Below, one piece after another: positions 1,341 through 29,995 of a DNA stretch of 38,585 nt (within the stretch, counting starts at the first letter, position 1; each line of letters opens with the position of its first letter). The DNA comes from Macrostomum lignano (Eukaryota), in assembly GCA_002269645.1 (NCBI GenBank), contig NIVC01002373.1, positions 141,106-179,690 on the forward strand. The letters run 5' to 3'. The position numbers were made by a program, and so were the translations under genes. The notes under the pieces are model-generated. The model was given only the letters and a program-made list of their open reading frames with translations. It did not search any database and was not told the DNA's origin.

Positions 1341-2186
1341 CTGCAGATGGTGTAACGTAATACGGTATGAAATGAACGCGATTTCGTTGCGCTCTAATAT
1401 ACACTGCAGAGTGTTTACAGAACTTCTGTAAAAATGAGCTTCGATCTGTGGCATTTATAAAATAGATGGCGCCGTGTACTTTCGAGTCAAAGAGCACTGC
1501 ACCTTTGAGTCTCAAGGTCCGCGTCACTGTTTTGCAATTGGCGGCACTGCAGCATATATGATGTACATGTACATGCACCTGTACAGCATTCCGACGTCGA
1601 CGACGTCCGCCGTCAACGTTCCTGACGTCTATCGACGTCACTGACAGATATGTACTTTTACATTAAACCGACTTTCAGCCGACGCATGTAACGTTGTTAT
1701 CATCGGTCGATGTAACGTAAAAATACTTATTTTACGTACAGCGACGTCTAGCTATGATAGACTCAGCAATTTAAGGCCTAAGGGCGCCACAACTGAGTGT
1801 CAAGGGTTGTATTTTACATGCAGGAGATATCAAATAAGGTCTCCTATTTCGTCAGGGGCTGCATGAGAGACGTCAGTTTTGAGAACTCTGGGGTAGCCAA
1901 GCATGCACTATAGCTTTTGGGTGTCCAGGGAAAGCCATTTTGAGATGTCAAGTTGCGCCACTTTTATGGGCCGGGGTTAAAGGCCTTCCTGTTTGAAGGG
2001 GGGGAGGGTCAGCTACCGGCGCCTGCACTTTGGCTTCCGCACTTTTTAGGGATTAATGGGTGCAAATGTTTGAATTTCAGGACCCTACTGAGACGTTTTG
2101 ATGTAATATCTTGAGTATTTGTAGTAGTGAAGAAGCAGAATTTCTTTAAAACGCTGAAAGTCATCTGAATAATCAATGATGGTTAC

Positions 2187-7646: not shown

Positions 7647-7860
7647 TCCATCCAACTATACTAATTGTCTAAGATTTGTCTGTCTGTCTGACCAGATGTA
7701 ACGCTCTACAGGCTGCAATTCTTGACCAATTTTGATCGCGTTTTCCTTAAAAGATTTGTAGTTATCTGGAAAGAAGACAGTTAAAATTTCTTGTATCTGC
7801 TTCAATGATAACGGTTTTAAATATTCGAAAAACTGTATACTTTCTTATATACCAAAGAAA
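7647..7860 (+). mobile_element. 5' part of a non-autonomous Helitron-like element
   Basis: A|TC start, ctatactaatt, a (CTGT)n microsatellite, then a segment homologous to 10490-10550 (17-mer ttaaatattcgaaaaac identical at 7817-7833 and 10518-10534). The 3' end is unresolved. Confidence 0.5.
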
Positions 7861-7958
7861 AAATGGTCAGAGGATTTGCAAAGCAAATAGCAAATTGCGG
7901 GTTGCAAAAAATGAGTTCGATTATTGAGCCATCTGCACACTCATTGAGCGAAACAGTA

Positions 7959-8457
7959 CTGGTGAAGCATTGCTAAACTGCTGGTGAAGCATTGCTAAAC
8001 TGCTGGTGAAGCATTGCTAAACTGCTGGTGAAGCATTGCTAAACTGCTGGTGAAGCCTTGCTAAACTGCTGGTGAAGCATTGCTAAACTGCTGGTGAAGC
8101 ATTGCTAAACTGCTGGTGAAGCATTGCTAAACTGCTGGTGAAGCATTGCTAAACTGCTGGTGAAGCATTGCTAAACTGCTGGTGAAGCATTGCTAAACTG
8201 CTGGTGAAGCATTGCTAAACTGCTGGTGAAGCATTGCTAAACTGCTGGTGAAGCATTGCTAAACTGCTGGTGAAGCATTGCTAAACTGCTGGTGAAGCAT
8301 TGCTAAACTGCTGGTGAAGCATTGCTAAACTGCTGGTGAAGCATTGCTAAACTGCTGGTGAAGCATTGCTAAACTGCTGGTGAAGCATTGCTAAACTGCT
8401 GGTGAACAAATTGCTAAACTGCTGGTGAACAAATTGCTAAACTGCTGGTGAACAAAT
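7959..8457. repeat. 22-bp minisatellite, about 22-23 nearly identical copies
   Basis: Unit ctggtgaagcattgctaaactg. Confidence 0.97.
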
Positions 8458-8730
8458 TTCTGAAGTGGTGGTGAACCATAGTATTGTTAACGAAAGACTA
8501 CTTTTAAAGAGAAGTGCAAGTGCAAGTTAAGTGCAAGTAGTTGCGGGAATTATTGCGGACTGCTAAGTGAATTATTTGATTGCTGAAGGGACAATTCTAG
8601 GCCGCTGAGGGTATAAATTCTTAATGTTAACGAAAGTTGTAGACTCCAAAGTGGATAAATGCAGACTGCCAAGAGATGACTGCAGTCTGTTTTGCGGGAT
8701 TAAATGGAGGGATGATTTTAGATTGTTTTA

Positions 8731-10163
8731 GGGATGCCTGCTGAAGGATGCTTGCTGTCTGGGGGATGCTTGCTGTTTGGGGAATGCTTGCTGTCTGGGG
8801 GATGCTTGCTGTCTGGGGAATGCTTGCTGTCTGGGGGATGCTTGCTGTCTGGGGAATGCTTGCTGTCTGGGGGATGCTTGCTGTCTGAGGAATGCTTGCT
8901 GTCTGGGGGATGCTTGCTGTCTGGGGAATGCTTGCTGTCTGGGGGATGCTTGCTGTCTGGGGGATGCTTGCTATCTGGGGAATGCTTGCTGTCTGGGGGA
9001 TGCTTGCTGTCTGGGGGATGCTTGCTGTCTGAGGAATGCTTGCTGTCTGGGGGATGCTTGCTGTTTGGGGAATGCTTGCTGTCTGGGGGATGCTTGCTGT
9101 CTGGGGAATGCTTGCTGTCTGGGGGATGCTTGCTGTCTGAGGAATGCTTGCTGTCTGGGGGATGCTTGCTGTCTGGGGAATGCTTGCTGTCTGGGGGATG
9201 CTTGCTGTCTGGGGGATGCTTGCTATCTGGGGAATGCTTGCTGTCTGGGGGATGCTTGCTGTCTGGAGGATGCTTGCTGTCTGAGGAATGCTTGCTGTCT
9301 GGGGGATGCTTGCTGTCTGGAGGATGCTTGCTGTCTGGGGGATGCTTGCTGTCTGGGGGATGCTTGCTATCTGGGGAATGCTTGCTGTCTGGGGGATGCT
9401 TGCTGTCTGGAGGATGCTTGCTGTCTGAGGAATGCTTGCTGTCTGGGGGATGCTTGCTGTCTGGAGGATGCTTGCTGTCTGGGGGATGCTTACTGTCTGG
9501 GGAATGCTTGCTGTCTAGATCTGGGGGATTGCTTGCTGTCTTGGGGATTGCTTGCTGTCTAGATCTGGGGGATTGCTTGCTGTCTAGATCTGGGGGATTG
9601 CTTGCTGTCTAGATCTGGGGGATTGCTTGCTGTCTTGGGGATTGCTTGCTGTCTAGGGCATTGCTTGCTGTCTGGGGGATTGCTTGCTGTCTTGGGGATT
9701 GCTTGCTGTCTAGATCAGGGGGATTGCTTGCTGTCTAGATCTGGGGGATTGCTTGCTGTCTAGATCAGGGGGATTGCTTGCTGTCTAGATCTGGGGGATT
9801 GCTTGCTGTCTAGATCAGGGGGATTGCTTGCTGTCTAGATCTGGGGGATTGCTTGCTGTCTAGATCAGGGGGATTGCTTGCTGTCTAGATCTGGGGGATT
9901 GCTTGATATCTATGGGTTGATGCTTTCTGGGGGATGCTTGCTGTCTGGGGGATCGCTTGCTGTCTAGGGGATGCTTGCTGTCTGGAGGATGCTTGCTGTC
10001 TGGGGGATTGCTTGCTGTCTGGGGGATGCTTGCTGTCTGGGGGATTGCTTGCTGTCTGGGGGATCGCTTGCTGTCTAGGGGATGCTTGCTGTCTGGAGGA
10101 TGCTTGCTGTCTGGGGGATTGCTTGCTGTCTGGGGGATGCTTGCTGTCTGGGGATGCTGGCTG
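8731..10163. repeat. 18-bp minisatellite with 24-25-bp variant sub-arrays
   Basis: Unit ggggatgcttgctgtctg. From about 9515 to 9900 the units carry an extra agatct/agatca. The array is the source of the spurious (LLSGGC)n and (CCLGDA)n ORFs. Confidence 0.97.
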
Positions 10164-10356
10164 TATGAGTATTTATTAAAGGTTTGATTCTAATAAAGAG
10201 GGGTCTAAGGCCGTCAGGGATTGGCATATTGAGCTCCTGCAGACCAGAATATAACTAGGCCAATGACAATACGCACTAAGAGTTTATGCTTGAAAGGATA
10301 AGCACTATTTGCTAATTGAGAAAAGAAAAGACAAGCGCTAAACTGCTAAAAAGCCA

Positions 10357-11958: not shown

Positions 11959-12470
<512 letters not shown>

Positions 12471-12532
12471 GATAGACGAAATTAATTAAAACCACACACA
12501 GTGAGAGAAAGTACTCGTATAAATGTTGATTT

Positions 12533-15090: not shown

Positions 15091-16050
15091 ATGGGTAACT
15101 CAGGCAACTCTAAACTCCGACGTAAACGACAATCGTTTTCATCAAGTCAGCCTAAAATTTCTTCAGAGCAATCATTAGATTTGGTTGAAGAGAGAGTGCC
15201 AAGACCAAGACCAAGACCAAGACCGAAAATTCATCGATCCAGGTATAACAAGTACATTTCTACTTCTTTCTATCAAGAAGCAACAACCGATCAACAATCA
15301 ACAACGGATCAACAAGCAACAACCGATCAACAAGCAACAACCGATCAACAAGCAACAACCGATCGACAAGCAACAACCGATCAACAAGCAACAACCGATC
15401 AACAAGCAACATCCGATCAACAAGGAACATCCGATCAAGAACCAGATGAATCACTCCAGTCGGCTACGACAGCCAAAAATCGATTCAACCCATTGTTCAA
15501 CACAGAAACAGTGCTCACAGACTTTAAGTACTCACTCTGCAGCATCCGCAACCTGCCAGCTAAACTGACCAGTCACGAAAGCGTCAGGCGCATCTTTGCT
15601 CCATATTTGCTGCCAGAGGCTGCACCAGGGGCCAGTAATTGGAAAAGTGAGGGAAAATCTGTGCTCCAAACTCTTACGAACAATGTAATCTTTAGTACAG
15701 ATGACTATCAACGACCTGAAGCGATGAAAAATGTCCAGAAGCTTCAGGAAGATCTCTCTGAGGACGAATATTGTGAAGAGCTGATGGAATTGGCAATCAG
15801 CATTGCCGACGGCGAGTGGATGCTGGCTGAAGAGACTCTAAGAAGTCTGAACAGAAGTTCCGCAGAAATTGTTCAGGGTTGCCTGCGAGACCTGCAAGAG
15901 AACGGAGATCAACCTCGAGACCACTGCCCGGTTGCGGAGGCCTGGTTCTGCTTCATGGTGGCCGTCTGGAGCCGCCTCAGGGCTGTCGGGACTGAGCCCG
16001 AGGACGAGGCTGAGAAGTTCGGGGCCTGCGTTAGCCAGACAGACAGTTAG
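15091..16050 (+). CDS. Uncharacterised 319-aa protein: basic N-terminus, (PR)n, about 9 TTDQQA repeats and a novel C-terminal helical domain
   Basis: Uninterrupted ORF with about 200 aa of non-repetitive sequence. The C-terminal ~100 aa aligns with the C-terminus of ORF 17136-19013. A 3'-splice-site-like ttttttaaatgcag lies 4 nt before the ATG, so upstream exons are possible. Confidence 0.75.
   Translation: MGNSGNSKLRRKRQSFSSSQPKISSEQSLDLVEERVPRPRPRPRPKIHRSRYNKYISTSFYQEATTDQQSTTDQQATTDQQATTDQQATTDRQATTDQQATTDQQATSDQQGTSDQEPDESLQSATTAKNRFNPLFNTETVLTDFKYSLCSIRNLPAKLTSHESVRRIFAPYLLPEAAPGASNWKSEGKSVLQTLTNNVIFSTDDYQRPEAMKNVQKLQEDLSEDEYCEELMELAISIADGEWMLAEETLRSLNRSSAEIVQGCLRDLQENGDQPRDHCPVAEAWFCFMVAVWSRLRAVGTEPEDEAEKFGACVSQTDS
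15284..15440 (+). repeat. Coding 18-bp tandem repeat (acaaccgatcaacaagca; TTDQQA, about 9 copies)
   Basis: Direct inspection within ORF 15091-16050. Confidence 0.9.
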
Positions 16051-17135
16051 GCCTTCTGGTTTGCTCTCAACCTTTAAGTTAACGATAAAGTGTTGCATAT
16101 CATCATTGTTCATCATTGATTGAATTTTTGTACATTAATGCTTGTAAATTAACCCACCTGTAGTGAGAAACTCTGGCTACGAGATAGTGTTAGTGCCTTA
16201 CGCTCGTAGTGCCTTAGTAGAAGGTGGCTATGCTTGTGCCTGTGTATTTATTGCCTGACAGAACAGACTTCCCGTTTATTGTGTGCGCATGGGTATGTGC
16301 TCCGAACTTCCTCACTGCATGCGCATGCTACACCACCCAGGGGGATGATGGCGAGGGCGGCCTTTGGGCGGAGAGTCGAGACATGAAAAAATGAGAGGGC
16401 ACCAAGCGCATCCTCGCTAAAATACAGAACCAATCCCTCTCTTTGGGTCCTTACCCTCCAGAATACACACCACCCTCAACAAATTTCTGAATGCGCCACT
16501 AAGAATGGGGGATTTTATATGTAAACATACGTGATCGTACAAGCGTTTTTTGCCTTTGATTTTTGAATCTAAGTCGGATATCCATATCCGTATATCATCT
16601 ACAATCGGTTTTCTTGTAGATACATGTACTTCTAAAGTAATTCCACGCTTTTAATCGGAATTTATAACGCGTCCGTTGAAATCGTCATTCCTTAAATTGC
16701 TGCTTATTTCCCTATACTTGTTGAGGCTGAGTAGGATAGATTTGACTCAAGAGAGTTCAAGGTGCAAACAAAATGTAGGGAGCTTAAAAGAAATTCGTAA
16801 ACTTTTAATTGATAGCATACCCAAGTCATATTCTATTAGGCGAGCAATCTTATCTTATAGAACCAGTAGTAACGAGCATGGTCTAGAATAATGGCTATAA
16901 CAAGGGCTGGTTACCTTCATTATTAACAGACCTAAATGTAATTGGTGAACTTTGATAGCATGCGTATCGTATCCTATTAGAAAGGCAATTTTTTCTTATA
17001 TAGTAAGAAGCGTTATCTGGAAGAATGGCAATAGAAAGGCTGTTTATCTTATTAATTACAGACTTTAACATAATCTGCATGGTTTTTCTACTCATAAAAT
17101 TTCTGAACCGGCTCAGCAACCAGACAGGTGTTTAA

Positions 17136-19013
17136 ATGAACACAGTGTTGCACATCGTCATCCGTACAAAGCACAGCGAAGACTTTAATCAAATAATTTT
17201 TTGCTACAAATGGGGGCCTGACGGAGAGACCAAGCAGTGCGAACTGATGAAGAAAGAGCTGCGCGGAAGCAGACCAGCTGAGCAAGTATGGTACCTCCGA
17301 GTTGATGCTGACACCGATGAAAACTTCAAAAACCTTGCAGTGACGGACAATGGCGAGCTGAAAAAAGCAGACACAGAGGACATACTGACAATGAGTCTGA
17401 GGAAAACCATCGAAGAGAGCTCAGACTATCCAGTACAGTTCAACGAAGAGCTCCGCTTTGTGCCTCATTTTGTTGCAGATAAGAAGGCGGAGTTTGTCAT
17501 TTTCTCAGATATTTCAAAGAATGACTTCCGAGTCATACCAATGATACCACTCTGCCTTATATTTGAAATTCAAACTCCAAAGTCGGTATCCAGCAAGTTT
17601 TATATCGAAGCTAATTATTCCGAACTGAATGGCAGCAGTTCTTTAGAAAGCAGGACATTCAAAAAGTCTCGTCTGCTCTGTACAGATTGCAAGGCATGCG
17701 AAAATGCTAAGCAAGATCACGGAGACACTCAGGTCTGGACACTGACTATTGAAAAGTTGCAAATGGTCAATTATAATGGCTTCATGAGACTGCCTACTGG
17801 AGAGCCACTGAGTGTTAAAGTTATGAAAGAGGATGCGGAAGCTTTCTCAGGCTCATACGACATCAATCTGTCTGTTGATGGCGGAGTCAACCCAACGCAA
17901 ACGTACTTGATAAAGCTGGACCGTCAAGCTGAACCCCAAGTGTTTAGAATCGCTCATTGTGAGTTGCACTTCAAATGCGAAATAAAAAACGTTGACAGCT
18001 TTGACTTGCGAGGAAACTGTCACGAACTGGGCCCTTGGAAGGAGCAGTTTAAATGTAAGAAAAATGAAAGTCTAAGGATTTTTGTGGCTGCAGTAGTTGT
18101 GGAAATGACCAAAGGATCAAAGTTTTTGAAAACGTTCGATCTGAGAGACTTTCAATTTGAAGCGCTGCTTCACTTCGCACCACCAGGAGAGACGTCTTGG
18201 CCGAAAACTTATACAATATCTCACTTTGAGGTACCGCTGCAGACATTCTCTGTATTTACAGTTGAAATTAAACAATCACGGCTTCAAACCAGGCTCTCAA
18301 TCGAACCAGTAGTCACTGAAGTCACTCACCGGTTGCACAAAATTGCAGGTAGTACGAGCACAAATAATTTAAGATTTCTTGTTCCTAAGTTACACAGACA
18401 TGGCAGAATCTACAGTGAGGACGATGATCCGCAAAGAACGCACGACATCTGGGGCGAAGACCCTCCAATGGAGACACGTGATGATATTGAGCCAGAAGCA
18501 AAGAGCGGGTTGACCTATCTGAAGCTGAGGCAGACCCGGCATCAACATGAGAGCCTCTGTGGAAGACGAATCGTTTTGAAGAGGCTGAGCAAACAGTATC
18601 ACCGCTATCAGGACGAAGCTGTTAGAAAGCTCTTGGACTGGAACGCCGATGAAGTAAGAAAAGCTGCGCTGAATAAAATCTGCAGAGGTGGCGCATCCGA
18701 TAGCGAATACAAAAACATTTTGCAGGCTCTAGCCACAGAAATTTTACAAAGTCGTTGCAGTGTCGCAGACCACTCGCTGCTGCTGTGGCTGGCCGCTGCC
18801 ATTGTTCGCGGCAGAGCTGAGGCTCTGGTTCTGAGTCCCAGGGCTCAGGCATGGCAGCAAACTAATTGGGAACGGCACATGGTCGCTGCGGAGTGCTGGT
18901 TTCGAGTCGTCTTGGCGCTCTGGGAGACTCGACCCGATGAGAGAGCAGACTTTCGCGAGGCCATCAGGAGAGCCGGTGAAAGTCCCGCCTTTTACACTTG
19001 GCGCGAGAATTGA
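17136..19013 (+). CDS. Uncharacterised 625-aa protein: putative tandem CBM20/CBM48-like beta-sandwich modules plus a C-terminal helical domain shared with ORF 15091-16050
   Basis: A 1878-nt non-repetitive ORF in AT-rich surroundings. LRGNCHELGPW resembles the CBM20 G(S/N)xxELGxW signature, and the C-terminal domain is paralogous to that of the upstream ORF. Confidence 0.85.
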   Translation: MNTVLHIVIRTKHSEDFNQIIFCYKWGPDGETKQCELMKKELRGSRPAEQVWYLRVDADTDENFKNLAVTDNGELKKADTEDILTMSLRKTIEESSDYPVQFNEELRFVPHFVADKKAEFVIFSDISKNDFRVIPMIPLCLIFEIQTPKSVSSKFYIEANYSELNGSSSLESRTFKKSRLLCTDCKACENAKQDHGDTQVWTLTIEKLQMVNYNGFMRLPTGEPLSVKVMKEDAEAFSGSYDINLSVDGGVNPTQTYLIKLDRQAEPQVFRIAHCELHFKCEIKNVDSFDLRGNCHELGPWKEQFKCKKNESLRIFVAAVVVEMTKGSKFLKTFDLRDFQFEALLHFAPPGETSWPKTYTISHFEVPLQTFSVFTVEIKQSRLQTRLSIEPVVTEVTHRLHKIAGSTSTNNLRFLVPKLHRHGRIYSEDDDPQRTHDIWGEDPPMETRDDIEPEAKSGLTYLKLRQTRHQHESLCGRRIVLKRLSKQYHRYQDEAVRKLLDWNADEVRKAALNKICRGGASDSEYKNILQALATEILQSRCSVADHSLLLWLAAAIVRGRAEALVLSPRAQAWQQTNWERHMVAAECWFRVVLALWETRPDERADFREAIRRAGESPAFYTWREN

Positions 19014-20242
19014 ATTTAACTTTCGAATGATATTCAATTTGATTTACTGATTGCATGCAGTAGCCATATTGACTTTAGGTATTTTCACTTTCTCTCGCTA
19101 ACCTAAAATTTATATCGAGAAACCATAAACTGTAAAATTTAGTTCAATGTGAAAAATGTGTCAGCTCCGGATGTGTCTTACATTCATGTAAATGTAATCT
19201 GTCCGTTTGACATTGCCACGACCAAGGATCATTAGCAGTATTTCAGGACACTACGAGAATGGAGGTAGGAAAAATCATTTTTATCACAAAATCAATCAAG
19301 AAGGAACAAAACAGTCAATTTAGCAAATGCCACTTGTGAGTATTTACAACTTTGGCTTAAAATATAAAAAACAATATGAAAAACGAAAATTCCACTGCAC
19401 AACATCATAAAATACAGCAGAGTAACATTTTGTGCATACGAAATTAATATAATTAATCTTCACTAACCCAGATCAAATCAAATGCAATCATTGATGTTGT
19501 GATGAAAAAAGATTATTTCCAATTATCTCCGCAGTGTATTTTCTTAAGGAAATCGCCCTTCACGATCTTTGAGTGTAGCGCCCTGATATACTGCTAGTGG
19601 TCCTTGTGCACAAACTATCATATGTTTTACACTGCAGACTCTCAAAGTGTTTTTTTATTTTTTTCTGGCTGTTAGCAATACGGTAATTGGTTAGAGTTTG
19701 CTGTTTGAAACAATATCTATGTGACGAAAAGTTACCAATATTTCTGAACTATCCTTGCCTAATTCAAAACTGATCTATATTTGAGCATGACCTGCTGTAT
19801 GTGCCTATAGCCATGTTGGTGTCAGTAGTTAGAAATTCTGTTTATAAATTCTGATTACTTCAAATATACTACACATACTACTGACAGACACCATCTAGCC
19901 AGTAACATCCGAGTCAGTCACTGAAATTCGCTTAAGGGATTCTTTGGCCGCTGCCGCAATGTCAGGCGACAGTCAGCCCGGCAGCCAGCAGTCATGCCAG
20001 CTCTTGTGACCCCCTGAGCACACAGGCGCTCTCACAGGGTGTACATGCAATGAGCCTGTCAGTCACACAGCTACTCATCTTGCGTGTTGGGCTCCACTGT
20101 CACAGGTTAGAGAGTCACCTACTCATGCATTTCTCACTCCAAAATTCAGCCACCTCAATATATTAGTATGCAAATATTTGTGAGCAGCAAATTCCATCGA
20201 TCAGAAACTGATCAAAGATCAGAAATGCACCGCTCCATCATT

Positions 20243-20248
20243 TTTATT
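20243..20248 (-). promoter_or_regulatory. Candidate AATAAA polyadenylation signal for BTAF1
   Basis: First clear AATAAA I noticed on the minus strand downstream of the stop at 21099 (about 850 nt away); position only. Confidence 0.25.
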
Positions 20249-20689
20249 CAGGCAAACAAAAATAGCAGCTAGATTGGTTGCTGTGATCAGCTTAAACTGC
20301 TTGAAAATATTATTGATAAATTGTATTTTTTACCTTAGCAGCAGGACAATGGCTAAACAGTATGAATGCGGCTGGCACAGCGTGGCACAATGTCACTACT
20401 GGCTGCTCAGCCGCATGCACGCATTGTAAAGTACATGGCAGATGAGCACTTCTTAATTAGTATGAGGGAAGTTGAGCTTGAATCAACATTTTTACAGCGA
20501 AGTTCAGCACAGACCGTAACAACATGCGGCATCTTCAATGAACCCTAGCAGCAGGACTGTTCACATTGGATACGACACTGTTGAATGCACCGAGACAGTC
20601 TGGGGAGAAGGAGGCAGAGACGAGGGAGTCTGTGGATGAGGGATTCTGGGAATGAAGGAATTCGAAAATGAATTCGCTGCAAATGAAAG

Positions 20690-21417: not shown

Positions 21418-24400
21418 CTGCAGGGGGCGGGTGGCAGTGCTGCTGGCACTGGGAATCCTCGGGCTGGGGTGCTGGATTCTCAGCACCGAAGAAATCCCCA
21501 CAGCTTTCCTCAAATCCCCACAGCATCCCTCAAATCCCCACAGTATCCCTCAAATCCCCACAGTATCCCTCTAATCCCCGAAACAACTTGGAAGTATTCC
21601 GAAATTTCATAAAGCACCGTAGAAATTCTCAGGCCAGAGTCTCATCATCAGAGCTGGCCTAACAACCCAGAACTCTAGCAACCAAGAACCATCCACCGTA
21701 GCAATCCATAAGTTCTCCTGGAAACAATCCCTTAGCAACCCAGAACTTCCCATGACAACCCCAGAATTCCTTCTAGAATTCCAGAACACCCATAGCAACT
21801 CAGAACATACCCTAGCAACCAGAACTACCCCTAGCAACCACCGTATCAACCAAGAGCCAGAACTCCCCCTTGGCAACCACCGTATCAACCAAGAGCCAGA
21901 AATCCCCCTAGCAACCACCGTATCAACCAAGAGCCGGAACTCCCCCTAGCAACCACCATAGCAACCAAGAGCCAGAACTTCCCAGAAACCCCCAGCAACC
22001 CAGAACCCCCCAGTCCACGCACTTCATGATCTTCTCCTCGATGGTGTCCCTGGTGAGCAGTCTGTAGACGCTCACAGCCCGAGTCTGTCCGATCCGATGC
22101 GCCCTGTCCATGGCCTGCAGATCCCGCATGGGGTTCCAGTCGTGATCAACAAAGATCACGGTGTCAGCGCCAGTCAGGTTCAGACCGAGGCCCCCAACAG
22201 AGGTTGTCAATAGCAACGCATCGATGCTGGGGTCGGAGTTGAACTTCTGCACCAGACTGTGTCGGTCAGCGGCTGGCACCGAGCCGTCCAGCCGCAGGTG
22301 CTGCATGTCGCTGTCCTTGAAGACCAGCTTCTCAACGAGGTCCAGAGTGGCTTTGGTCTGAGCGAAGAGCAGCACTCGGTGCTGACTCACCACGCCCAGC
22401 CGGCTGTCTCCCGTGATCCCAATGTCTGACAGCAGCTGGCGCAGTGCCAGGAACTTTCCAGAGTTTTCCACGGTGGCCACGTTCTTGTGCTGCTGCTGCT
22501 GCTGGGGACTCGAACCAAGGACCAAGGCTGGGTGATTGCAGATCTTGCGCAGGAAGTGCAGCGCCTGCGGTTTCAAATGGGGATATTGGGGATCAGAGTG
22601 GCAGCTTGAGCACGCGAAGGGATACACTCAGGATTGAGTGTCCGGTCCCTCAGATTGAGTGTACGATCCCTCAGATTGAGTGTCCGGTCCCTCAGAATGA
22701 GTGTCCGGTCTCTCAGATTGTGTCAGGTCCCTCAGATTGAGTGTACGATCCCTCAGATTGAGTGTCCGGTCCCTCAGATTGAGTGTCCGATCTCTCAGAT
22801 TGAGTGTACGATCCCTCAGAATAAGTGTACGATCCCACAGATTGAGTGTACGATCCCTCAGATTGAGTGTCCGGTCTCTTAGATTGAGTGTCCGATCTCT
22901 TAGATTGAGTGTCCGGTCCCTCAGATTGAGTGTCCGGTTCCCTCAGATTGAGTGTCTCAGATTGAATGTCCGATCTCTCAGATTGAGTGTCTCAGATTGA
23001 GTGTCTCAGATTGAGTGTCCGGTCCCTTAGATTGAGTGTACGATCCCTCAGAATGAGTGTACAATCCCTCAGATTGAGTGTACGATCCCTCAGATTGAGT
23101 GTCCGGTCTCTTAGATTGAGTGTCCGATCTCTCAGATTGAGTGTCCGGTCCCTCAGATTGAGTGTCCGGTTCCCTCAGATTGAGTGTCTCAGATTGAGTT
23201 TCCGGTCACTCAGATTGAGTGTCCGGTCCCTCAGATTAAGTGTCCGGTTCCCTCAGATTGAGTGTCTCAGATTGAGTTTCCGGTCACTCAGATTGAGTGT
23301 CCGGTCCCTCAGATTGAGTGTCCGGTTCCCTCAGATTGAGTGTCTCAGATTGAGTTTCCGGTCACTCAGATTGAGTGTCCGGTCCCTCAGATTGAGTGTC
23401 CGGTTCCCTCAGATTGAGTGTCCTATCTCTTAGATTTTGTGGCCGATCTCTCAGATTGAGTGTCCAGTCCCTCAGATTGAGTGTCCGGTCTCTCAGATTG
23501 AGTGTCCGATCTCTCAGATTGAGTGTCCGGTCCCTCAGATTGAGTGTCCGGTTCCCTCAGATTGAATGTCCTATCTCTTAGATTTTGTGGCCGATCTCTC
23601 AGATTGAGTGTCCGGTCCCTCAGATTGAGTGTCTCAGATTGAGTGTCCGGTCCCTCCGATTGAGTGTCCGGTCTCTCAGATTGAGTGTCCAATCTCTCAG
23701 ATTGAGTGTCCAATCTCTCAGATTGAGTGTCCAATCTCTCAGATTGAGTGTCCGGTCCCTCAGATTGAGTGTCCGGTTCCCTCAGATTGAGTGTCCTATC
23801 TCTTAGATTTTGTGGCCGATCTCTCAGATTGAGTGTCCGGTCCCTCAGATTGAGTGTCTCAGATTGAGTGTCCGTCTTTCAGATTGAGTGTCTGATCTCT
23901 CAGATTGAGTGTCCGATCCCTCAGATTGAGTGTCCGATCCCTCAGATTGAGTGTCCGGTCTCTCAGATCGAGTGTCCGGTCTCTCAGATCGAGTGTCCGG
24001 TCCCTCAGATTGAGTGTCCGATCGCTAAGATTGAGTGTCCGATCTCACCCCAGGTGTTACTCATCACTCACCTGGAAGATGTGCTGGCGGTTGTCACCAG
24101 AGTCTGAGTCACCGGTGCCCAGGTGGCTGTTGCGGCAAAACTTCTCATACAACTGGGCCTGCGGTGTCGAGATGGGGTGGGTGGGACTGCGATGAAAAGA
24201 TGGGAATTCAGGTTTGGATGTGATGCTGGAAGGTGCATCCCTACAAAGTCAAATATTCAAATAGTGACTAGAACAGATGAAAAATGATTAGAACAGGTAA
24301 AAGGCTATTTAACAAGTACAATTTAATTCCAACAGGAAATGTCAATTTTAACAGGTAATATGCGACTCAAACCGGTAATATGTGACTCAAAACCGTAATG

Positions 24401-27400
24401 TGTGACTCAAACCGGTAATATGCGACTCAAACCGGTAATATGCGACTCAAACCGGTAATATGTGACTCAAACCGGTAATATGCGACTCAAACCGGTAATA
24501 TGCGACTCAAACCGGTAATATGTGACTCAAACCGGTAATGTGTGACTCAAACAGGTAATATGCGACTCAAACCAGTAATATGCGACTCAAACCGGTAATA
24601 TGTGACTCAAACCAGTAATATGCGACTCAAACCGGTAATATGTGACTCAAACCGGTAATGTGTGACTCAAACCGGTAATATGCGACTCAAACCGGTTATA
24701 TGTGACTCAATTGGTAATATGTGACTCAAATCGGTAATAAGTGACCTAAACCGGTAAAAAGCAATTAAAACCAGCGTCAGTCTCACCTGCAGAGGACTCA
24801 GCTGGCAGTAATAATCCTGACAAATCTTCGGTGGCAGGTCCCTCAGCACGTCCTCCTTGAGCCGCCTGAGCATAAACGGCAGAGTCTGTCTGTGAAGAGC
24901 CTCCAAAGCGAGGGTGCCCTTGGTCTGGTCCTCAGTGCCAGCCTTCACATCCCTGGAGCCCTGGATTGGCTTGGCAAAGGCGGTGGAGAACTCTGACTCG
25001 GTGCCCAGGTAGCCGGGCATCAGGAAGTCGAAGATGGCCCACAGCTCGTGAACTCCGTTCTGAATTGGGGTGCCCGTCAGCACGAGACGGTGCTGGCATC
25101 TCAGTGACTTCACGGCGAGACTGAGCTGCAGGGGGGGGGGGGGTGAGGGTGGCTGAGTGAGCTGCAGAGGTGGTTGAGGGTGGCTGAGTGAGCTGCAGAG
25201 GTGGCTGAGGGTGGCTGAGTGAGCTGCAGTGTCGGGTGAGGGTGGCTGAGTGAGCTGCAGAGGTGGCCGAGTGAGCTGCAGAGTGCAGAGATGGCTGAGT
25301 GAGCTGCAGAGGTGGCTGAGTGAGCTGCAGAGGTGGCTGAGTGAGCTTCAGAGGTGGCTGAGTGATCTGGGCATCACAAAGAATGGGTCAACAATTATTT
25401 CTGATTATTTGAGTCAGTTTTCATGCATTATCGATTTCCATAATGTAAGTATAAACTTCTGCTGAAAATTAAAGCGTAAAAGTGCTAAGTTTACTACTGA
25501 ATCGCATTGAACAAGTAAGTAGCAAGTAACAAACCTTAGATTTAGGATTTTTTATTATGTGACCTTCGTCCAAAATGCAGTAATTCCACGCGACCTCCCT
25601 GCAATGAGCGTCGGTTTGAGGTCGATGGATGCGAAACCTTTGTGATGACGGGGCACAACCTTTATTATGGCCCAGCAACTGAGGATCTGGGAGGCTGGCC
25701 CAGCAACTGAGGATCTAGGAGGCTGACCCAGCAACTGAGGATCTGGGAAGCTGGCCCAGCAACTGAGGATCTGGGAGGCTGGCCCAGCAACTAAGGATCT
25801 GGGAAGCTGGCCCAGCAACTGAGGATCTGGGAGGCTTCCCAGCAACTGAGGATCTGGGAAGCTGGCCCAGCAACTGAGGATCTGGGAAGCTGGCCCAGCA
25901 ACTGAGGATCTCGGAGGCTTCCCAGCAACTCAGGATCTGGGAAGCTGGCCCAGCAACTGACACTTTGGGAGGCTGGCCCAGCAACTGAGGATATGGGAGC
26001 TGTCTTACCCAAACAACTCAGCGTCCTTCCGCACAGCGTCAAAGGAGGTGATCAGGATGGTGCAGCCCGACTTCTCCGGCGACCTTTTGTGCGTTTTAAC
26101 AAATTTTTCAATCAGTGCCCGACGCGTCTGCCGGTTGCCATTGACAACCAGCGGCTGGGCGGCGTCGTCGCTGATGAACTTCTCCATCTCGTACTGCCAG
26201 TGGCCGGTGAGGGTGGCCGGGCACACCACCAGGGAGGGCAGCGGCCGGTCCGCCGCTTTGTTGCTGGCCTGGGGGCAGAAGGGGGCAGATATGGGACAAT
26301 GGTGAGCGGATTGGGGAGCAGATTACCTGATGGCTGATGCTTCAATTAGAATCCACGAATCCCATTAACTGCTATTTCAAATGAATAATATCCTCAAGGA
26401 GAACCCTATTCAATAGAATCTCATCGCCCGATAAAAATCTTACGACCCAGAATCCCATCACTCACAATCTCATCACCCAAAATCCCATGACTCAAAATCT
26501 CACAACTCAGAATCCCATTGTTCATCACTCAGAATCCCACAACCCAGAATCCTATCTTTAAAATTCAATTACCAAGAATCTCATCACTTAGAATCCCATT
26601 CCCATCACCCCATCAATCAGAAACCTACTCCCAACCATCGCATTCCCCATGTATCATCCCATTCCCCATCACTCGATTCACTCAGAATCCCATTCCTCAT
26701 CATCAAAGTCCCCATCGCCCCATTCACCCAGAATCCCATTCCTCATCCTCCTATCACCCAGATTCCCAATACTCATCACCCAGAATCCCTTTCTCCATCA
26801 CCCAGAATCCCCTTCTCCATCACTTAGAATCCCCTTCTCCATCACCCAGAATCCCCTTTTTCCATCACTCAGAATCCCATTCCTCGTCACTCCATCACCC
26901 AGAATCCCATTATCCATCACCCCACCCCAGCATCCCACGCACCTGGAAGCAATCCAGCCTCTCCCGGTGCTCCCCAGCCAGGGCGCAGATGGTCATGAGC
27001 GTCTTGCCCAGCCCCAGGTCGTCAGCCAAGACGCCGTTCAGTCCGTAGCGCCGCAGGAACACCAGCCAGTTGACGCCCTCCTGCTGATAGGATCGCAGCT
27101 GCGCTTTCACGGCCACCGGCGCGGAGTAGGCAGCGGCTCTGCTCGGGTGGAGCAGACAGTCGATGAAGCCTCGCTCAGCATCCCGCCTAGCAACCAGCTC
27201 CGGAGTGAGGGCAGCACTGGCGCCACTTTTAGTCGCTTCCAACGGCAGCAGGCGAAGCAGACGGCCGAACGTCTTGGCCGAGGCGGACCGGACACTGGCG
27301 TTCTGGTCGGACATGCGGCCGAGACAAGGCAGCAGCAGCAGAGCCAGGTAGGGCAGGATGAGCAGTTCCAGATCCCTGACTAGGATGAAGCTGAGCTCAG

Positions 27401-29458
27401 CTGCTCCCAGTCTGCAGGCCGGCTCCGAGTGGCTCAGCCAATCCAGACACAGCTGTACACCCGGGCTGCGCGCCTCCTCGCTGCGTCGGCACCAGGCGGA
27501 CACCAGCCGGGCGGCGGCGTGTCGGAGGCGGGGATCGGCGCTGGACAGGGGGCCGGGGTGGCGGCGGCAGAGGGGCAGAAGGACGGAGGACAGCTGCGGG
27601 ATTTGGGTGAATGAGTGGGGATTTGGGTGAATGAATGGGGATTTGGGTGAATGAGTGGGGATTTGGGTGAATGAATGGGGATTTGGGTGAATGAGTGGGG
27701 ATTTGGGTGAATGAGTGGGGATTTGGGTGAATAAATAGGGATTTGGGTGAATAAATGGGGATTTGGGTGAATAAATGGGGATTTGGGTGAATAAATGGGG
27801 ATTTAGGTGAGTAAATGGGGATTTGGGTGAATGAATGGGATTTGGGTGAATGAATGGGGATTTGGGTGAATGAATGGGATTTGGGTGAATAAATGGGGAT
27901 TTGGGTAAATGAATATGGCGATTTGGGTGAATGAATGGGGATTTGGGTGAATGAATGGGGCGATTTGGTAAACTAAGAATACGATCATATGATATTGGTA
28001 AACGGGTTGGGTGTATGGACACTTAATTGAAAAACGGTCAAATTTAGTCGAGGCCAGCTGTGTTCACCTGGTCGAAGGCGCCGCTGTCCAGATGATCGCA
28101 GCAGATCTCCAGGGCCATCAGGGAGGTCAGCAGAGAGGAGACGCCCGCGGAGTCCAGCGAATCTGCGGCATGAAATTCGGGTTCAGAGCGAATATTTTTA
28201 TTTCTATTTTAAAATATACAATAAAACGCATTTTTTACTGCAAGTAGCAAGTAGGTAATTTTAGCAGTATTTTATAGTGCAGTGGCCCTCACCAAAATCG
28301 GCCAGGGCTGCGGCCGGAAAGTCGAGCAGCAGCCGCCACAGCGCCGGCAGCCCGGTGGCCAGGCGGTGGCCGAAAAGACGGCAGACCGCCTGGAAGGCCA
28401 GCTGGCCGCCTCGGGTCTCCAGCGGGACTGCTTCGGGCTGATGCTGCTGCATAGTTGCTATGGCAACAATTTCTTCCTTAGCAACGGTGGGCAAGGCGGT
28501 GTCAGCGCGCAGATAGGCGGAAAGATTCTTGATGATCTTGTCGGCCACGGCCTCTCCGGACGGCTTGGCGGACAGCAGCAGCAGTGCCTGGGCGAGGGCG
28601 TCTGCAGACAGGCGCTGGGGAGGCGAATTCGATGCTGGGGAAGGGTAATTCGGTGCTGGGGGAGGGGAATTCGATGCTGGGGGAGGGGAATTCTGTGCTG
28701 GGGGAGGGGAATTCTGTGCTGGGGGAGGGGAATTCGATGCTGGGGGAGGGGAATTTAATGCTGGGGGAGGGGACTTCGATGCTGGGGGAGGGGAATTTGA
28801 TACTGGGGGAGGGGAATTCGATGCTGGGGGAGGGGAATTTGATACTGGGGGAGGGGAATTCGATGCTGGGGGAGGGGAATTCGATGCTGGGGGAGGGGAA
28901 TTCGGTGCTGGGGGAGGGGAATTCGGTGCTGGGGGAGGGAAATTTAGTGCTATGGGAGGGAAATTCGGTGCTGGGAGGAGGAGGAGTATTATTTAGTTTA
29001 CTATGCCTATTATCTATCAGTATATTATCTAGTAGTAGGCTGAGGCCCACGCCCACACAGAGCAGGGAGTACAGTGGCCACCCCCTAAAGTTCACAGGTT
29101 TGCGGGATTGCTAAAAATAACTTCAACGAACACTTTAATACCTCTATTATAAGACTTTACTTTTATCCGACTACGATATGCCACTATTTTTTTCTAATAA
29201 ACCTTTCCTGAATATAACTGATGAGCTTGAAATTCATCGGCAAAATCCAATGTAATGTTGGTTTTAAAGTTTTTATTTCTCCAGTTATGATTAAGCGTGA
29301 AACTGTATTTATACGATAGCTGGCTGGCGTTCGCTACCTGCAGCCTGGCGTTCTCCTCAGCTCTGAGGCTGTCCATGAGCGGCTTGATCACCGGACTGAC
29401 TCGGTCTGGGAGGTCTGCCACCAGCAGGCATAGGGCCGCTGCAAGGCTGGACTGCACC
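21099..29458 (-). CDS. BTAF1: BTAF1/Mot1 TBP-associated SNF2-family ATPase, 3' half (10 exons, about 932 aa visible; 5' exons lie beyond the window)
   Basis: Exons 29458-29338, 28614-28293, 28162-28068, 27593-26943, 26268-26009, 25598-25535, 25125-24787, 24158-24072, 22564-22023 and 21417-21099. All are flanked by AG/GT with matching phases and splice into one open frame. Motifs include [33 protein letters not shown], the Mot1-typical Walker [46 protein letters not shown] and EKIMKYQKFK. Confidence 0.97.
21490..22015. repeat. Intronic degenerate repeats (units of about 20 bp and 39 bp), G-rich on the BTAF1 sense strand
   Basis: cctcaaatccccacagtat (about 3 copies) and ccccctagcaaccaccgtatcaaccaagagccagaact (about 3-4 copies). 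Confidence 0.85.
22023..22564 (-). CDS. BTAF1: BTAF1 exon (helicase C-terminal lobe)
   Basis: [12 protein letters not shown]...RLDGSV...[33 protein letters not shown]; acceptor aaaccgcag, donor AA|gtgcgt. Confidence 0.96.
22628..24047. repeat. Intronic 21-bp minisatellite, about 1.4 kb
   Basis: Unit ctcagattgagtgtccggtcc with 14-bp and 22-bp variants; source of the (LRLSVRS)n and (QIECPVP)n ORFs. Confidence 0.97.
24072..24158 (-). CDS. BTAF1: BTAF1 exon (absent from the ORF track)
   Basis: accgcag|[29 protein letters not shown]|gtgagt, phase 0 at both ends; links SPLQ to ALHFLRK. Confidence 0.9.
24350..24755. repeat. Intronic 20-bp minisatellite, about 20 copies
   Basis: Unit accggtaatatgcgactcaa. 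Confidence 0.96.
24787..25125 (-). CDS. BTAF1: BTAF1 exon (SNF2_N motifs III onward)
   Basis: [23 protein letters not shown]...[28 protein letters not shown]|gtgaga. Confidence 0.96.
25121..25365. repeat. Intronic 21-bp minisatellite overlapping the 3' splice site
   Basis: Unit gagctgcagaggtggctgagt. Confidence 0.93.
25535..25598 (-). CDS. BTAF1: BTAF1 exon (Walker B)
   Basis: cattgcag|[22 protein letters not shown]|gtttgt. Confidence 0.94.
25669..25995. repeat. Intronic 28-bp minisatellite, about 11 copies
   Basis: Unit cccagcaactgaggatctgggaagctgg. Confidence 0.95.
26009..26268 (-). CDS. BTAF1: BTAF1 exon (motif Ia)
   Basis: ccccag|[31 protein letters not shown]...[17 protein letters not shown]|gtaaga. 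Confidence 0.94.
26440..26935. repeat. Intronic degenerate repeat of about 20 bp, G-rich on the BTAF1 sense strand
   Basis: Recurrent catcacccagaatccc. Confidence 0.85.
26943..27593 (-). CDS. BTAF1: BTAF1 exon (HEAT repeats into Walker A)
   Basis: LSSVLL...RHAAARLV...RLGAAE...[25 protein letters not shown]...[12 protein letters not shown]...[13 protein letters not shown]; acceptor cccgcag, donor CAG|gtgcgt. Confidence 0.96.
27598..27965. repeat. Intronic 20-bp minisatellite abutting the 3' splice site, about 18 copies
   Basis: Unit atttgggtgaatgaatgggg. Confidence 0.95.
28068..28162 (-). CDS. BTAF1: BTAF1 exon (absent from the ORF track)
   Basis: gccgcag|(D)[31 protein letters not shown]|gtgaac; phases fit both neighbours. 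Confidence 0.88.
28293..28614 (-). CDS. BTAF1: BTAF1 exon (HEAT region)
   Basis: ccccag|[14 protein letters not shown]...DKIIKNL...TRGGQLAF...LPALW...DF-G|gtgagg. Confidence 0.92.
28615..28980. repeat. Intronic 21-bp minisatellite abutting the 3' splice site, about 17 copies
   Basis: Unit gctgggggaggggaattcgat. Confidence 0.95.
29338..29458 (-). CDS. BTAF1: BTAF1 exon (most 5' exon visible)
   Basis: attacag|[41 protein letters not shown]|gtagcg, matching the recalled BTAF1 LPEKLNPIIKPLMETIKKEEN. Confidence 0.92.

Positions 29459-29489: not shown

Positions 29490-29995
<506 letters not shown>

What the first reader, a model, noticed from the sequence alone, without database searches (positions are those of the whole stretch)
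15754..18990. Tandem orphan genes sharing an unrecognised C-terminal helical domain of about 100 aa
Seen in sequence: two adjacent uninterrupted plus-strand ORFs with unrelated N-termini end in alignable segments. ORF1 reads SEDEYCEELMELAISIADGEWMLAEETLRSLNRSSAEIVQGCLRDL...HCPVAEAWFCFMVAVW...DEAEKF. ORF2 reads SDSEYKNILQALATEILQSRCSVADHSLLLWLAAAIVRGRAEAL...HMVAAECWFRVVLALW...DERADF. The conserved pattern is S-x-x-EY...LA..I......A..(T/S)L...A.IV.G....L...H...AE.WF....A.W...DE...F. Nucleotide similarity is not evident, so the duplication is old and the domain has been retained at the protein level. I do not recognise the domain. Inference: a lineage-specific modular family in which one effector or interaction domain is fused to different targeting N-termini (basic/repeat tail versus beta-sandwich modules), as in sensor/adaptor pairs.
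Basis: partly seen in the sequence, partly recalled or inferred. Interest (0 to 1): 0.75.

Follow-up and report, generated by a model that had tools for sequence, protein, structure and literature searches.

The report
Flatworm gene pair sharing undescribed domain
Two neighbouring genes of the flatworm Macrostomum lignano really do share a helical C-terminal domain; it is the tail of a roughly 250-residue module that defines an undescribed protein family seen almost only in this flatworm, and its function is unknown.

Summary
ORF1 (15091-16050, 319 aa) and ORF2 (17136-19013, 625 aa) are intact plus-strand genes of Macrostomum lignano.

Their pairwise similarity is marginal (BLASTP E=0.011). 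A profile built only from seven other proteins still hits ORF2 at E=1e-39 and ORF1 at E=4e-13.

The shared ~100 aa is the helical half of a ~250-aa C-terminal module, with motifs LVP..G.YD, HDIWGE, AAIVRGR.EA, WF...A.W and P.FY.W. The module occurs in at least nine 50%-identity clusters. All named members are M. lignano hypothetical proteins.

Some long members carry Pfam CBM_20 modules at the N-terminus. ORF2 has the whole module. ORF1 is a shortened, module-only relative that lacks the HDIWGE segment and the P.FY.W tail.

No Pfam, PDB sequence or PDB fold match was found. ORF2 is not ORF1's nearest relative, so the pair is not a recent tandem duplicate.

Function is inferred only: ligand-binding beta modules plus a helical interaction module.

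Unexpectedly, ORF1 and the 5' two-thirds of ORF2 differ at dS of about 1 from the homeologous locus, while the adjacent BTAF1 gene differs at dS 0.02.

Interest is moderate to low: a real, undescribed lineage-specific family.

The parts
15091..16050 (+). ORF1: a 319-aa single-exon gene, a short module-only member of the family.
   Evidence: ORF list. Called as a 319-aa gene in the NCBI annotation of NIVC01002373.1. Paralogues lie at L001 8351-9442, L002 7690-8895 and L003 19433-20203. The C-domain has dN/dS 0.26 at dS of about 1.
15091..15132 (+). ORF1 N-terminus MGNSGNSKLRRKRQ: a myristoylation-type G2 motif followed by a polybasic stretch. It is not conserved in the paralogues.
   Evidence: Read from the sequence. 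The paralogue N-termini differ. The motif assignment comes from my own knowledge of the PROSITE-type pattern and was not tested.
15272..15438 (+). Coding 18-nt minisatellite, (A/S)TTDQQ x 9, inside ORF1. Copy number varies among the paralogues.
   Evidence: TRF: period 18, 9.3 copies. Direct-repeat family D1. The paralogue translations show about 20 units in L001, about 30 in L002 and none in L003.
15487..15618 (+). ORF1 residues 133-176 (NPLFNTETVLTDFKYSLCSIRNLPAKLTSHESVRRIFAPYLLPE): a weak match, in the same order, to the start of the family module (part A, ending in the LVP/LLP motif).
   Evidence: The HMM built from the other family members hits ORF1 137-176 at profile positions 11-49, iE 1.3e-3. 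Alignment.
15676..16032 (+). ORF1 residues 196-314: the helical domain (part C of the module). It contains EY..L.ELA.SI, AEIVQG, AEAWF...VAVW and EKF..C.
   Evidence: The HMM built without any ORF1 or ORF2 sequence gives iE 5.8e-13, 34.8 bits. The AF2 model of residues 205-319 has pLDDT 74.8, pTM 0.68 and five helices.
16051..17135 (.). 1,086-bp spacer between the two genes. An AG acceptor-like site lies just upstream of each ATG (tttaaatgcag|gtcaATG for ORF1, accagacag|gtgtttaaATG for ORF2).
   Evidence: Sequence. The spacer cannot be aligned with L002 or L003 and is only 70% identical to L001 over 300 nt. The trans-splicing reading is inference from PMC5730564.
17136..19013 (+). ORF2: a 625-aa single-exon gene, a full-module member of the family.
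   Evidence: ORF list. Identical protein P0001 is annotated on NIVC01002373.1 and NIVC01004955.1. Paralogues are P0002 (89% identity) and P0003 (59%).
17136..18290 (+). ORF2 residues 1-385: a beta-rich N-terminal region with no recognisable family.
   Evidence: AF2 secondary structure is almost all strands, but confidence is low (pLDDT 42.7). No Pfam hit even at E<=10 on fragments. No significant similarity to the N-termini of other family members.
17949..18113 (+). ORF2 residues 272-326, containing RGNCHELGPW: a weak match to the CBM20-like 'G-N-C-x-E-L-G' modules of the paralogues.
   Evidence: The HMM of 10 paralogue modules gives iE 2.9e-5 at Z=1 (10.6 bits), and hhalign gives P=1.7e-4 over 24 columns. 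The modules were picked by that same motif, so the test is partly circular. Pfam CBM_20 itself is not hit.
18291..19010 (+). ORF2 residues 386-625: the complete family C-terminal module. Motifs: LRFLVPKL..G.IY (412-426), HDIWGED (436-442), SGLTYLKLRQTRH (457-469), RLSKQYHRYQDEAV (483-496), the helical domain (521-614) and the terminal PAFYTWREN (617-625).
   Evidence: The HMM from the other members gives E=1.2e-39 over residues 412-624. The all-member HMM covers 386-625.
18696..18977 (+).
   Evidence: BLASTP, hhalign, shuffle control, eight-sequence alignment with invariant E, L-A, I, L, I-V, L, R, W-F, W, F.

Best explanation
SHOWN. ORF1 and ORF2 are two protein-coding genes of Macrostomum lignano. 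Both belong to one undescribed multigene family with very narrow taxonomic spread.

The family is defined by a C-terminal module of about 250 aa in three parts:
- Part A: ...L..F...L....P....V..YA..LVP.I...G.YD
- Part B: HDIWGE, an acidic linker, RSA..Y, then RL..YH.RE
- Part C: a bundle of four or five helices (EY..L..LA..I / AAIVRGR.EA.LV / H..AA.WF..L.A.W / F...I), usually ending in P.FY.W

ORF2 has the whole module behind about 385 aa of beta-rich sequence. ORF1 is a shortened paralogue. It keeps a weak part A and a clear part C. It has lost part B, the terminal P.FY.W and all beta modules, and it carries a low-complexity TTDQQA-repeat N-terminus instead.

The two are ancient paralogues, not a recent tandem duplicate. 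Both are under purifying selection.

INFERRED. The invariant residues of part C are a small residue (G/A) in helix 2 and W-F and W in helix 3, with aliphatic residues elsewhere. These look like core-packing positions, so part C is most likely a structural or protein-protein interaction domain rather than a catalytic one.

In the long members, beta-sandwich arrays would bind a ligand. Two of them reach the Pfam CBM_20 cut-off, so alpha-glucan or glycogen is the obvious candidate. The C-terminal module would then assemble or dock the protein.

ORF1 has only the helical part. It could pair with, or compete for, the partner of full-length members such as its neighbour ORF2.
For: Organism and gene status:
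- Every named database relative is an M. lignano hypothetical protein.
- The window lies within NIVC01002373.1, around positions 148-170 kb, and both ORFs are annotated there as single-exon genes.
- That annotation was built from RNA-seq-guided transcripts (PMC5730564).

Homology:
- hhalign P=1.5e-4, and 0 of 300 shuffles reach the real score.
- A profile of the shared segment finds 9 further proteins at E<1e-3 among 1.84 billion cluster representatives.
- An HMM built from those alone returns ORF2 at 1.2e-39 and ORF1 at 4.4e-13.

Module anatomy and ORF1's missing part B:
- Alignment.
- ORF1 matches profile positions 10-48 and 134-241 of 260.

Helical fold:
- The AF2 model of the ORF1 domain has pLDDT 74.8 and pTM 0.68.
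- The same order of helices is predicted in ORF2 at 522-613.

CBM_20 in paralogues:
- P0010: 37.8 bits against a cut-off of 23.3.
- P0011: 24.0 bits against a cut-off of 23.3.

Selection:
- ORF1 C-domain: dN/dS 0.26 at dS of about 1.
- ORF2 N-terminal region: dN/dS 0.40 at dS of about 0.85.

Ancient split: ORF1's domain is 26-32% identical to most long members (19-20% to the most divergent), and ORF2 is not the closest.
Against: There is no functional evidence of any kind. I had no expression level, tissue, localisation or interaction data.

ORF2's own N-terminal region does not hit Pfam CBM_20 even at E<=10. It resembles the paralogues' modules only around one short motif.

The full-length ORF2 model is unusable (pLDDT 42.7).

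The 'core-packing' reading of the conserved residues rests on one medium-confidence model built from five sequences.

Part B (HDIWGE) could be the functional site, in which case ORF1 lacks it.

In the module-coding half of ORF2, dN/dS between copies is 0.7-1.4. That does not show constraint there, although the number of substitutions is small.
Confidence: 0.55

Rival explanations
1. The pair is a functionally coupled two-gene cassette. ORF1 would be a dedicated partner of ORF2 (adaptor, inhibitor or antidote-like), and the two would be co-inherited and perhaps co-transcribed as one trans-spliced unit.
For: The order, orientation and spacing (0.56-1.1 kb) are the same at four distinct loci, plus a redundant copy (L005) of the window's own locus. 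One of the four, L001, lies in a different genomic context.

ORF1 and the ORF2 N-terminal region diverge together into the same two sequence classes, A and B, at dS of about 1.

Acceptor-like AG sites sit just upstream of both ATGs. [quoted passage not shown]
Against: Three of the loci are simply the three subgenome copies of one block. Their shared arrangement therefore counts as one observation, not three.

Other long family members (P0008, P0010, P0012) have no ORF1-like neighbour.

ORF2 is not ORF1's closest relative.

No interaction or co-expression data exist.
Confidence: 0.2
2. The similarity is a chance or compositional match between two helical, alanine- and leucine-rich C-termini.
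For: Direct BLASTP gives only E=0.011 with 22% gaps. hhalign probability is only 46-51%.
Against: 0 of 300 column shuffles reach the score, z about 7.6.

An HMM containing neither family hits both ORFs, at 4e-13 and 1e-39.

The same invariant positions hold across 8 to 19 sequences.

Both domains sit at the same distance from the C-terminus.
Confidence: 0.02
3. ORF1 is a decaying gene fragment, a partial duplicate of a long family member. It would be annotated because it is transcribed but would have no function.
For: It lacks part B, the terminal motif and all beta modules.

Its N-terminus is low-complexity and differs between copies in start, repeat number and upstream exons.

A short module remnant does exist beside another family gene, at L007 10105-10302.
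Against: The ORF is intact in all five genomic copies and in a 226-aa relative from an independent sequencing run (P0007).

The C-domain has dN/dS 0.26 at dS of about 1.0 between classes A and B.

The most conserved stretches are the same ones conserved family-wide.
Confidence: 0.05
4. The family derives from a mobile element or virus: intronless, multicopy and restricted to one lineage.
For: ORF1, ORF2, P0010 and P0012 are intronless, whereas the average M. lignano gene has 4.9 introns (PMC5730564).

There are many copies, and no homologues outside the lineage.
Against: No terminal inverted or long direct repeats flank the pair.

No transposase, integrase, reverse-transcriptase or capsid domains appear in any member.

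The copies sit in conserved synteny next to BTAF1, as expected for subgenome copies rather than for insertions.
Confidence: 0.04

Closest known systems
Animal CBM20 (starch/glycogen-binding module) proteins: laforin/EPM2A, STBD1, GPCPD1 (named from my own knowledge). Pfam PF00686 CBM_20.
   Same: Long members of this family, P0010 and P0011, contain modules that pass the Pfam CBM_20 cut-off. The recurring 'V.G.C.ELG' signature of the family's beta modules resembles the CBM20 'G...LG.W' signature. ORF2 has one such motif, RGNCHELGPW.
   Different: No phosphatase, phosphodiesterase or other known partner domain is present. The C-terminal 250-aa module has no counterpart in those proteins. ORF2 itself fails CBM_20. 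ORF1 has no beta module at all.
Mlig-sperm1 family (Grudniewska et al. 2018, PMC5816591).
   Same: It is also a flatworm-restricted, multicopy family of M. lignano with a conserved domain unknown to Pfam.
   Different: None of nine gene identifiers of the present family appears in the supplementary files held for that paper, which include its member table (Supplementary Table 4). Mlig-sperm1 homologues exist in planarians, whereas this family was found in no planarian or parasitic flatworm protein set. The conserved Mlig-sperm1 domain is described as the first of three predicted domains, with a beta sheet plus helices, not as a C-terminal helical bundle.
Generic small helical bundles and helical repeats in the PDB (designed helical repeats, FEM1B, 14-3-3, talin rod domains).
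   Same: All are alpha-helical up-and-down packing. These are the top Foldseek matches.
   Different: The best E-value is 1.4, TM-scores are 0.2-0.5 and identity is 6-22%. These are not evidence of relationship.

Membership tests
Undescribed Macrostomum family with the C-terminal 'LVP / HDIWGE / AAIVRGR / WF..W / P.FY.W' module (defined here from P0008-P0015) | Part C helical domain (EY..L..LA..I, A.IV.G, H..A..WF....A.W, F...[AC][IV]) | tested here: met
   With an HMM that excludes both ORF families, ORF1 196-314 scores iE 5.8e-13, and ORF2 is covered within its 412-624 hit at E=1.2e-39.
Undescribed Macrostomum family with the C-terminal 'LVP / HDIWGE / AAIVRGR / WF..W / P.FY.W' module (defined here from P0008-P0015) | Part A (..L..F...L....P....V..YA..LVP) | tested here: inconclusive
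   In ORF2, LRFLVPKL at 412-419 lies inside the significant hit. In ORF1, residues 137-176 match in the same order but only at iE 1.3e-3 with the independent HMM.
Undescribed Macrostomum family with the C-terminal 'LVP / HDIWGE / AAIVRGR / WF..W / P.FY.W' module (defined here from P0008-P0015) | Part B (G.YD ... HDIWGE ... RSA..Y ... RL..YH.RE) | tested here: not met
   This feature is met by ORF2 (HDIWGED at 436-442, RLSKQYHRYQDEAV at 483-496). It is not met by ORF1: profile positions 49-133 are skipped and the alignment shows a gap there. ORF1 is therefore filed as a truncated relative, not a full member.
Undescribed Macrostomum family with the C-terminal 'LVP / HDIWGE / AAIVRGR / WF..W / P.FY.W' module (defined here from P0008-P0015) | Extreme C-terminal aromatic motif P.FY.W | tested here: not met
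   ORF2 has PAFYTW at 617-622. ORF1 ends ...EKFGACVSQTDS without the motif.
Pfam PF00686 CBM_20 (starch-binding domain) | Score above the gathering cut-off (23.3 bits) on the protein | tested here: not met
   ORF1 and ORF2 give no hit at E<=1 on the whole proteins. ORF2 fragments give no hit at E<=10. The paralogues do pass: P0010 at 37.8 bits and P0011 at 24.0 bits.
Pfam PF00686 CBM_20 (starch-binding domain) | Binding of alpha-glucan (starch or glycogen) | not testable with these tools
   This needs a binding assay with recombinant modules.
Mlig-sperm1 family (PMC5816591) | Listed among the 35 M. lignano genes with blastp E<1e-15 to Mlig-SPERM1 (Supplementary Table 4) | tested here: not met
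   None of Mlig033770, 021936, 022669, 034522, 026577, 011641, 010431, 018956 or 023762 occurs in the held supplementary files. The control identifier Mlig020950 does occur.
Any solved structure or PDB sequence family | Significant sequence-profile or fold match | tested here: not met
   The module profile against PDB sequences gives only a designed coiled coil, at E=0.0023 with no stretch passing on its own. Foldseek of the ORF1 domain model gives a best E of 1.4.

The most novel reading that the evidence does not exclude
The ORF1-ORF2 pair would be a co-adapted two-gene unit kept in two anciently diverged sequence classes, A (the window, its redundant copy L005, and L001) and B (L002, L003). 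These classes differ at dS of about 1 across ORF1, the spacer and ORF2 codons 1-400. They are embedded in subgenome copies that otherwise differ by about 2%: the BTAF1 gene 2 kb away has dS 0.02.

That pattern is what long-term balancing or diversifying selection on a recognition, compatibility or toxin-antidote-like locus would leave. Later recombination or gene conversion would have homogenised the module-coding 3' third of ORF2.

My data do not exclude this. They equally fit an ectopic replacement from an older paralogue.
Probability: 0.1. Interest if true: 0.65.

Novelty: new variant of a known kind. Interest (0 to 1): 0.35.

Why it matters
It adds one defined, testable domain family to the very large pool of flatworm 'hypothetical proteins'. 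The family comes with a motif description, module boundaries and a list of members with 1-3 module copies and CBM20-type arrays.

M. lignano is a transgenic and RNAi-tractable model, so the family can be tested directly.

The more interesting lead is evolutionary. The gene pair is a hotspot of divergence, with dS up to about 1, between subgenome copies of a neopolyploid whose paralogues normally differ by 1-2%. If that reflects selection rather than ectopic conversion, it would mark a locus of unusual biology.

Otherwise this is an ordinary lineage-specific family.

Tried and rejected
1. The search for homologous proteins with the 8-sequence domain alignment A3 returned nothing at all, not even the input proteins. 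The cause is probably the candidate cap.

2. The AF2 model of full-length ORF2 from a 3-sequence alignment has pLDDT 42.7. It is unusable for fold search.

3. Foldseek of the ORF1 domain model against the PDB gave no match better than E=1.4. I did not run the viral library because the organism is an animal.

4. Pfam scans of the whole proteins, of fragments and of all 12 module sequences gave only scattered sub-threshold hits (Actin, SDH5_plant and others), each in a single member. I rejected these as noise.

5. ORF1's database hits P0005 and P0006 are matches to the TTDQQA low-complexity repeat only. Rejected.

6. P0013 (4,007 aa) is a junk chimeric translation that contains a P0011-like piece. 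It does not count as a separate architecture.

7. The Mlig-sperm1 family was considered and rejected.

8. A search for expression data by gene identifier found nothing: 0 papers in full text, and nothing in the supplements of PMC5816591 or PMC12896417.

9. The JGI metagenome scan gave 591 pattern matches with the HDIWG and AAIVRGR patterns, but none was confirmed as a relative.

10. A search for transposon-like terminal repeats around the pair found none.

11. A simple chimeric assembly as the cause of the mosaic divergence was rejected. The window's ORF2 3' half is about 10% from every other copy, not near-identical to one of them.

Full report
**What the window is**

The window is eukaryotic and rich in mini- and microsatellites. 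ORF2's only database relatives are Macrostomum lignano hypothetical proteins. The exact ORF2 protein is annotated on contig NIVC01002373.1 of assembly GCA_002269645.1, with a 319-aa gene (ORF1) 1,086 bp upstream and a BTAF1/Mot1-type SNF2 gene downstream on the other strand (Pfam).

That assembly's annotation was derived from RNA-seq-guided transcript models (PMC5730564). Both ORFs therefore probably have transcript support, although I could not inspect it.

**Checking the observation**

ORF1 (15091-16050) and ORF2 (17136-19013) are uninterrupted plus-strand ORFs.

- Direct BLASTP aligns ORF1 223-308 with ORF2 521-605 at 28% identity, 22% gaps, E=0.011. On its own that is marginal.
- tblastn found the same ORF1-like then ORF2-like tandem at three further loci, L001, L002 and L003. 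This gave four sequences of each type.
- Profile-profile comparison then gives P=1.5e-4 over 71 columns.
- The score is 38.5 against 15.2 +/- 3.1 (maximum 29.3) for 300 column-shuffled controls.
- An eight-sequence alignment keeps E, L-A, I, L, I-V, L, R, W-F, W and F invariant.

**The wider family**

I searched a profile of five C-terminal segments with HMMER against 1.84 billion cluster representatives. It found 11 proteins at E<1e-3. Besides the input families these were:

- P0007 (226 aa, ORF1-like, from an independent sequencing run)
- P0008 (1,348 aa)
- P0009 (1,848 aa, three module copies)
- P0010 (649 aa)
- P0011 (1,525 aa)
- P0012 (529 aa)
- P0014 (899 aa, two copies)
- P0015 (112 aa, from an ENA metagenome contig)
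- P0013, a junk chimeric model

All named ones are M. lignano hypothetical proteins.

Aligning the C-termini shows that the conserved unit is about 250 aa, in three parts:

- Part A ends in YA..LVP.I...G.YD.
- Part B contains HDIWGE, an acidic linker, RSA..Y and RL..YH.RE.

An HMM built only from P0008-P0015 scores ORF2 at E=1.2e-39 (residues 412-624). It scores ORF1 at E=4.4e-13 (residues 196-314), plus a weak hit in the same order at residues 137-176.

The homology is therefore established independently of the weak pairwise signal. ORF2 is a complete member. ORF1 lacks part B and the terminal motif.

**Is the domain known?**

No.

- Pfam gives nothing above cut-off for either ORF or for any of 12 module sequences.
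- A module profile against PDB sequences gives only a designed coiled coil at E=0.0023.
- An AF2 model of the ORF1 domain (pLDDT 74.8, pTM 0.68, five helices) has no Foldseek match in the PDB better than E=1.4.
- The low-confidence full-length ORF2 model (pLDDT 42.7) predicts helices in the same order at 522-613 and an almost all-beta N-terminal region.
- The family is not the published Mlig-sperm1 family.
- It was not found in JGI metagenome contigs or in any non-Macrostomum protein set.

**N-terminal regions**

P0010 and P0011 pass the Pfam CBM_20 cut-off. The long members carry several modules with a 'G-N-C-x-E-L-G' signature.

ORF2 has one such motif, RGNCHELGPW at 292-301. It matches an HMM of the paralogue modules weakly (iE 2.9e-5 at Z=1). 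It does not hit Pfam CBM_20. Its N-terminal region is otherwise unrelated in sequence to the others.

ORF1's N-terminus is a myristoylation-like MGNSGNS plus a basic stretch, followed by nine TTDQQA repeats. None of this is conserved in the paralogues.

**Evolution**

ORF1's helical domain is 26-32% identical to most long members (19-20% to the most divergent), and ORF2 is not its nearest relative. The adjacency is therefore not a recent tandem duplication.

Between the two sequence classes, A (the window and L001) and B (L002 and L003), selection looks as follows:

- ORF1 domain: dN/dS 0.26 at dS of about 1.0.
- ORF2 N-terminal region: dN/dS 0.40 at dS of about 0.85.

Both are under purifying selection.

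P0010 and P0012 are intronless and isolated, with no ORF1-like neighbour.

**An unexpected feature**

M. lignano DV1 carries three subgenome copies. They differ by about 2% overall and about 1.1% in coding sequence (PMC10733133).

The window, L002 and L003 all carry BTAF1 downstream of the pair (window; L002 and L003), so they look like those three copies. The divergence between the window and L002 changes sharply along the locus:

| Region | Divergence, window vs L002 |
|---|---|
| BTAF1 exons | dS 0.019-0.025, dN <= 0.002 |
| Intergenic 19575-20599 | 86% identical |
| ORF2 codons >= ~412 (exactly the family module) | dS about 0.1 |
| ORF2 codons 1-400 | dS 0.5-2.6 |
| Spacer between the genes | cannot be aligned |
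| ORF1 | dS 0.8-1.0 |

In the module-coding part of ORF2, all four copies are about equally distant from one another and dN/dS is 0.7-1.4.

The window's class-A genes are 91% identical to L001, which has no BTAF1 within 10 kb downstream.

I cannot distinguish between three explanations: ancient haplotype classes, ectopic gene conversion from an older paralogue, and unusually fast evolution. A simple assembly chimera is unlikely, because no copy is near-identical to the window in the ORF2 3' half.

**Mechanism (inferred)**

The family-wide invariant positions of part C are a glycine or alanine in the middle of helix 2 (IVRG), W-F and W in helix 3, and aliphatic residues in helices 1 and 4. That is the pattern of a packed helical core, not of a catalytic site.

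My best reading has three steps:

- The module is a structural or protein-interaction unit.
- The beta-sandwich arrays of long members bind a ligand. Alpha-glucan is the only candidate with any support, from the CBM_20 hits.
- ORF1, as a helical-domain-only protein, could pair with or compete against full-length members.

None of this is shown. Part B (HDIWGE), which ORF1 lacks, is the only conserved polar motif and may be the real functional site.

**Verdict**

This is an undescribed lineage-specific family, of moderate to low general interest. The divergence island is worth following up.

Noticed in passing
window ~15091-18370, compared with L002 7690-11200 and L003 19433-22250: This is a hyperdivergent island. 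ORF1, the spacer and ORF2 codons 1-400 differ from the homeologous loci at dS 0.5-2.6, and the spacer cannot be aligned. BTAF1 exons 3-6 kb away differ at dS 0.02, and the genome-wide CDS divergence between subgenomes is about 1.1%.
   Followed up: partly
window 18370-19013 (ORF2 codons ~412-625) and the equivalents in L001-L003: In the module-coding third of ORF2, all four copies are about equally distant from one another (dS 0.06-0.17). dN/dS is 0.7-1.4, and the tree does not follow the A/B classes. This suggests gene conversion or recombination with a breakpoint at the start of the family module.
   Followed up: partly
window 15272-15438; L001 ~8520-8790; L002 ~7740-8180: The in-frame 18-nt minisatellite encoding (A/S)TTDQ(Q/E) varies from 0 units (L003) to about 30 units (L002) among ORF1 paralogues. 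It produced spurious database hits P0005 and P0006.
   Followed up: partly
window 21923-29400, minus strand: A BTAF1/Mot1-like gene (HEAT repeats, SNF2-related domain, Helicase_C). Its introns are largely filled with 14-38-nt minisatellite arrays, for example 22627-24041 (period 21, 70 copies), 24350-24757, 25668-25999, 27598-27960 and 28617-28981.
   Followed up: partly
window 961-3580, minus strand: An Hsp70-family gene split over at least three ORFs, matching Pfam HSP70 profile positions 38-243, 296-448 and 488-588. This implies introns or frame breaks. It is not found in the 7-10 kb upstream of the pair in L001-L003.
   Followed up: partly
window 31070-38585 (runs to the window end): A satellite array with a ~238-bp unit (higher-order periods 376 and 474), built from 68-71-bp subrepeats. 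Neighbouring units are 95-97% identical.
   Followed up: no
window 7959-8452, 8746-10164, 11959-12476, 29490-29993: Large simple arrays: a 22-nt unit x 22, an 18-nt unit x 74 (which generates long spurious ORFs), (AGAT) x 130 and (GACA) x 127. Strong GC skew runs across 8-13 kb.
   Followed up: no
L007 10105-10302: A 66-aa fragment matching only the last part of the family module (profile positions 185-240, E=1.6e-16). It lies about 150 nt downstream of the stop codon of P0010 and is probably a partial duplicate remnant.
   Followed up: no
window 15091-16050 and 17136-19013; L007 8001-9950; L008 8001-9590; L009 7893-12704: Family genes are intronless. L009 even has a 1,604-aa uninterrupted ORF where the gene model P0008 removes a KESDQ repeat as an intron. 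The average M. lignano gene has 4.9 introns.
   Followed up: no
L005 (NIVC01004955.1, 30 kb): A second contig of the same assembly carries ORF1 and ORF2 with identical proteins. This is a redundant or haplotype copy of the window's locus.
   Followed up: no
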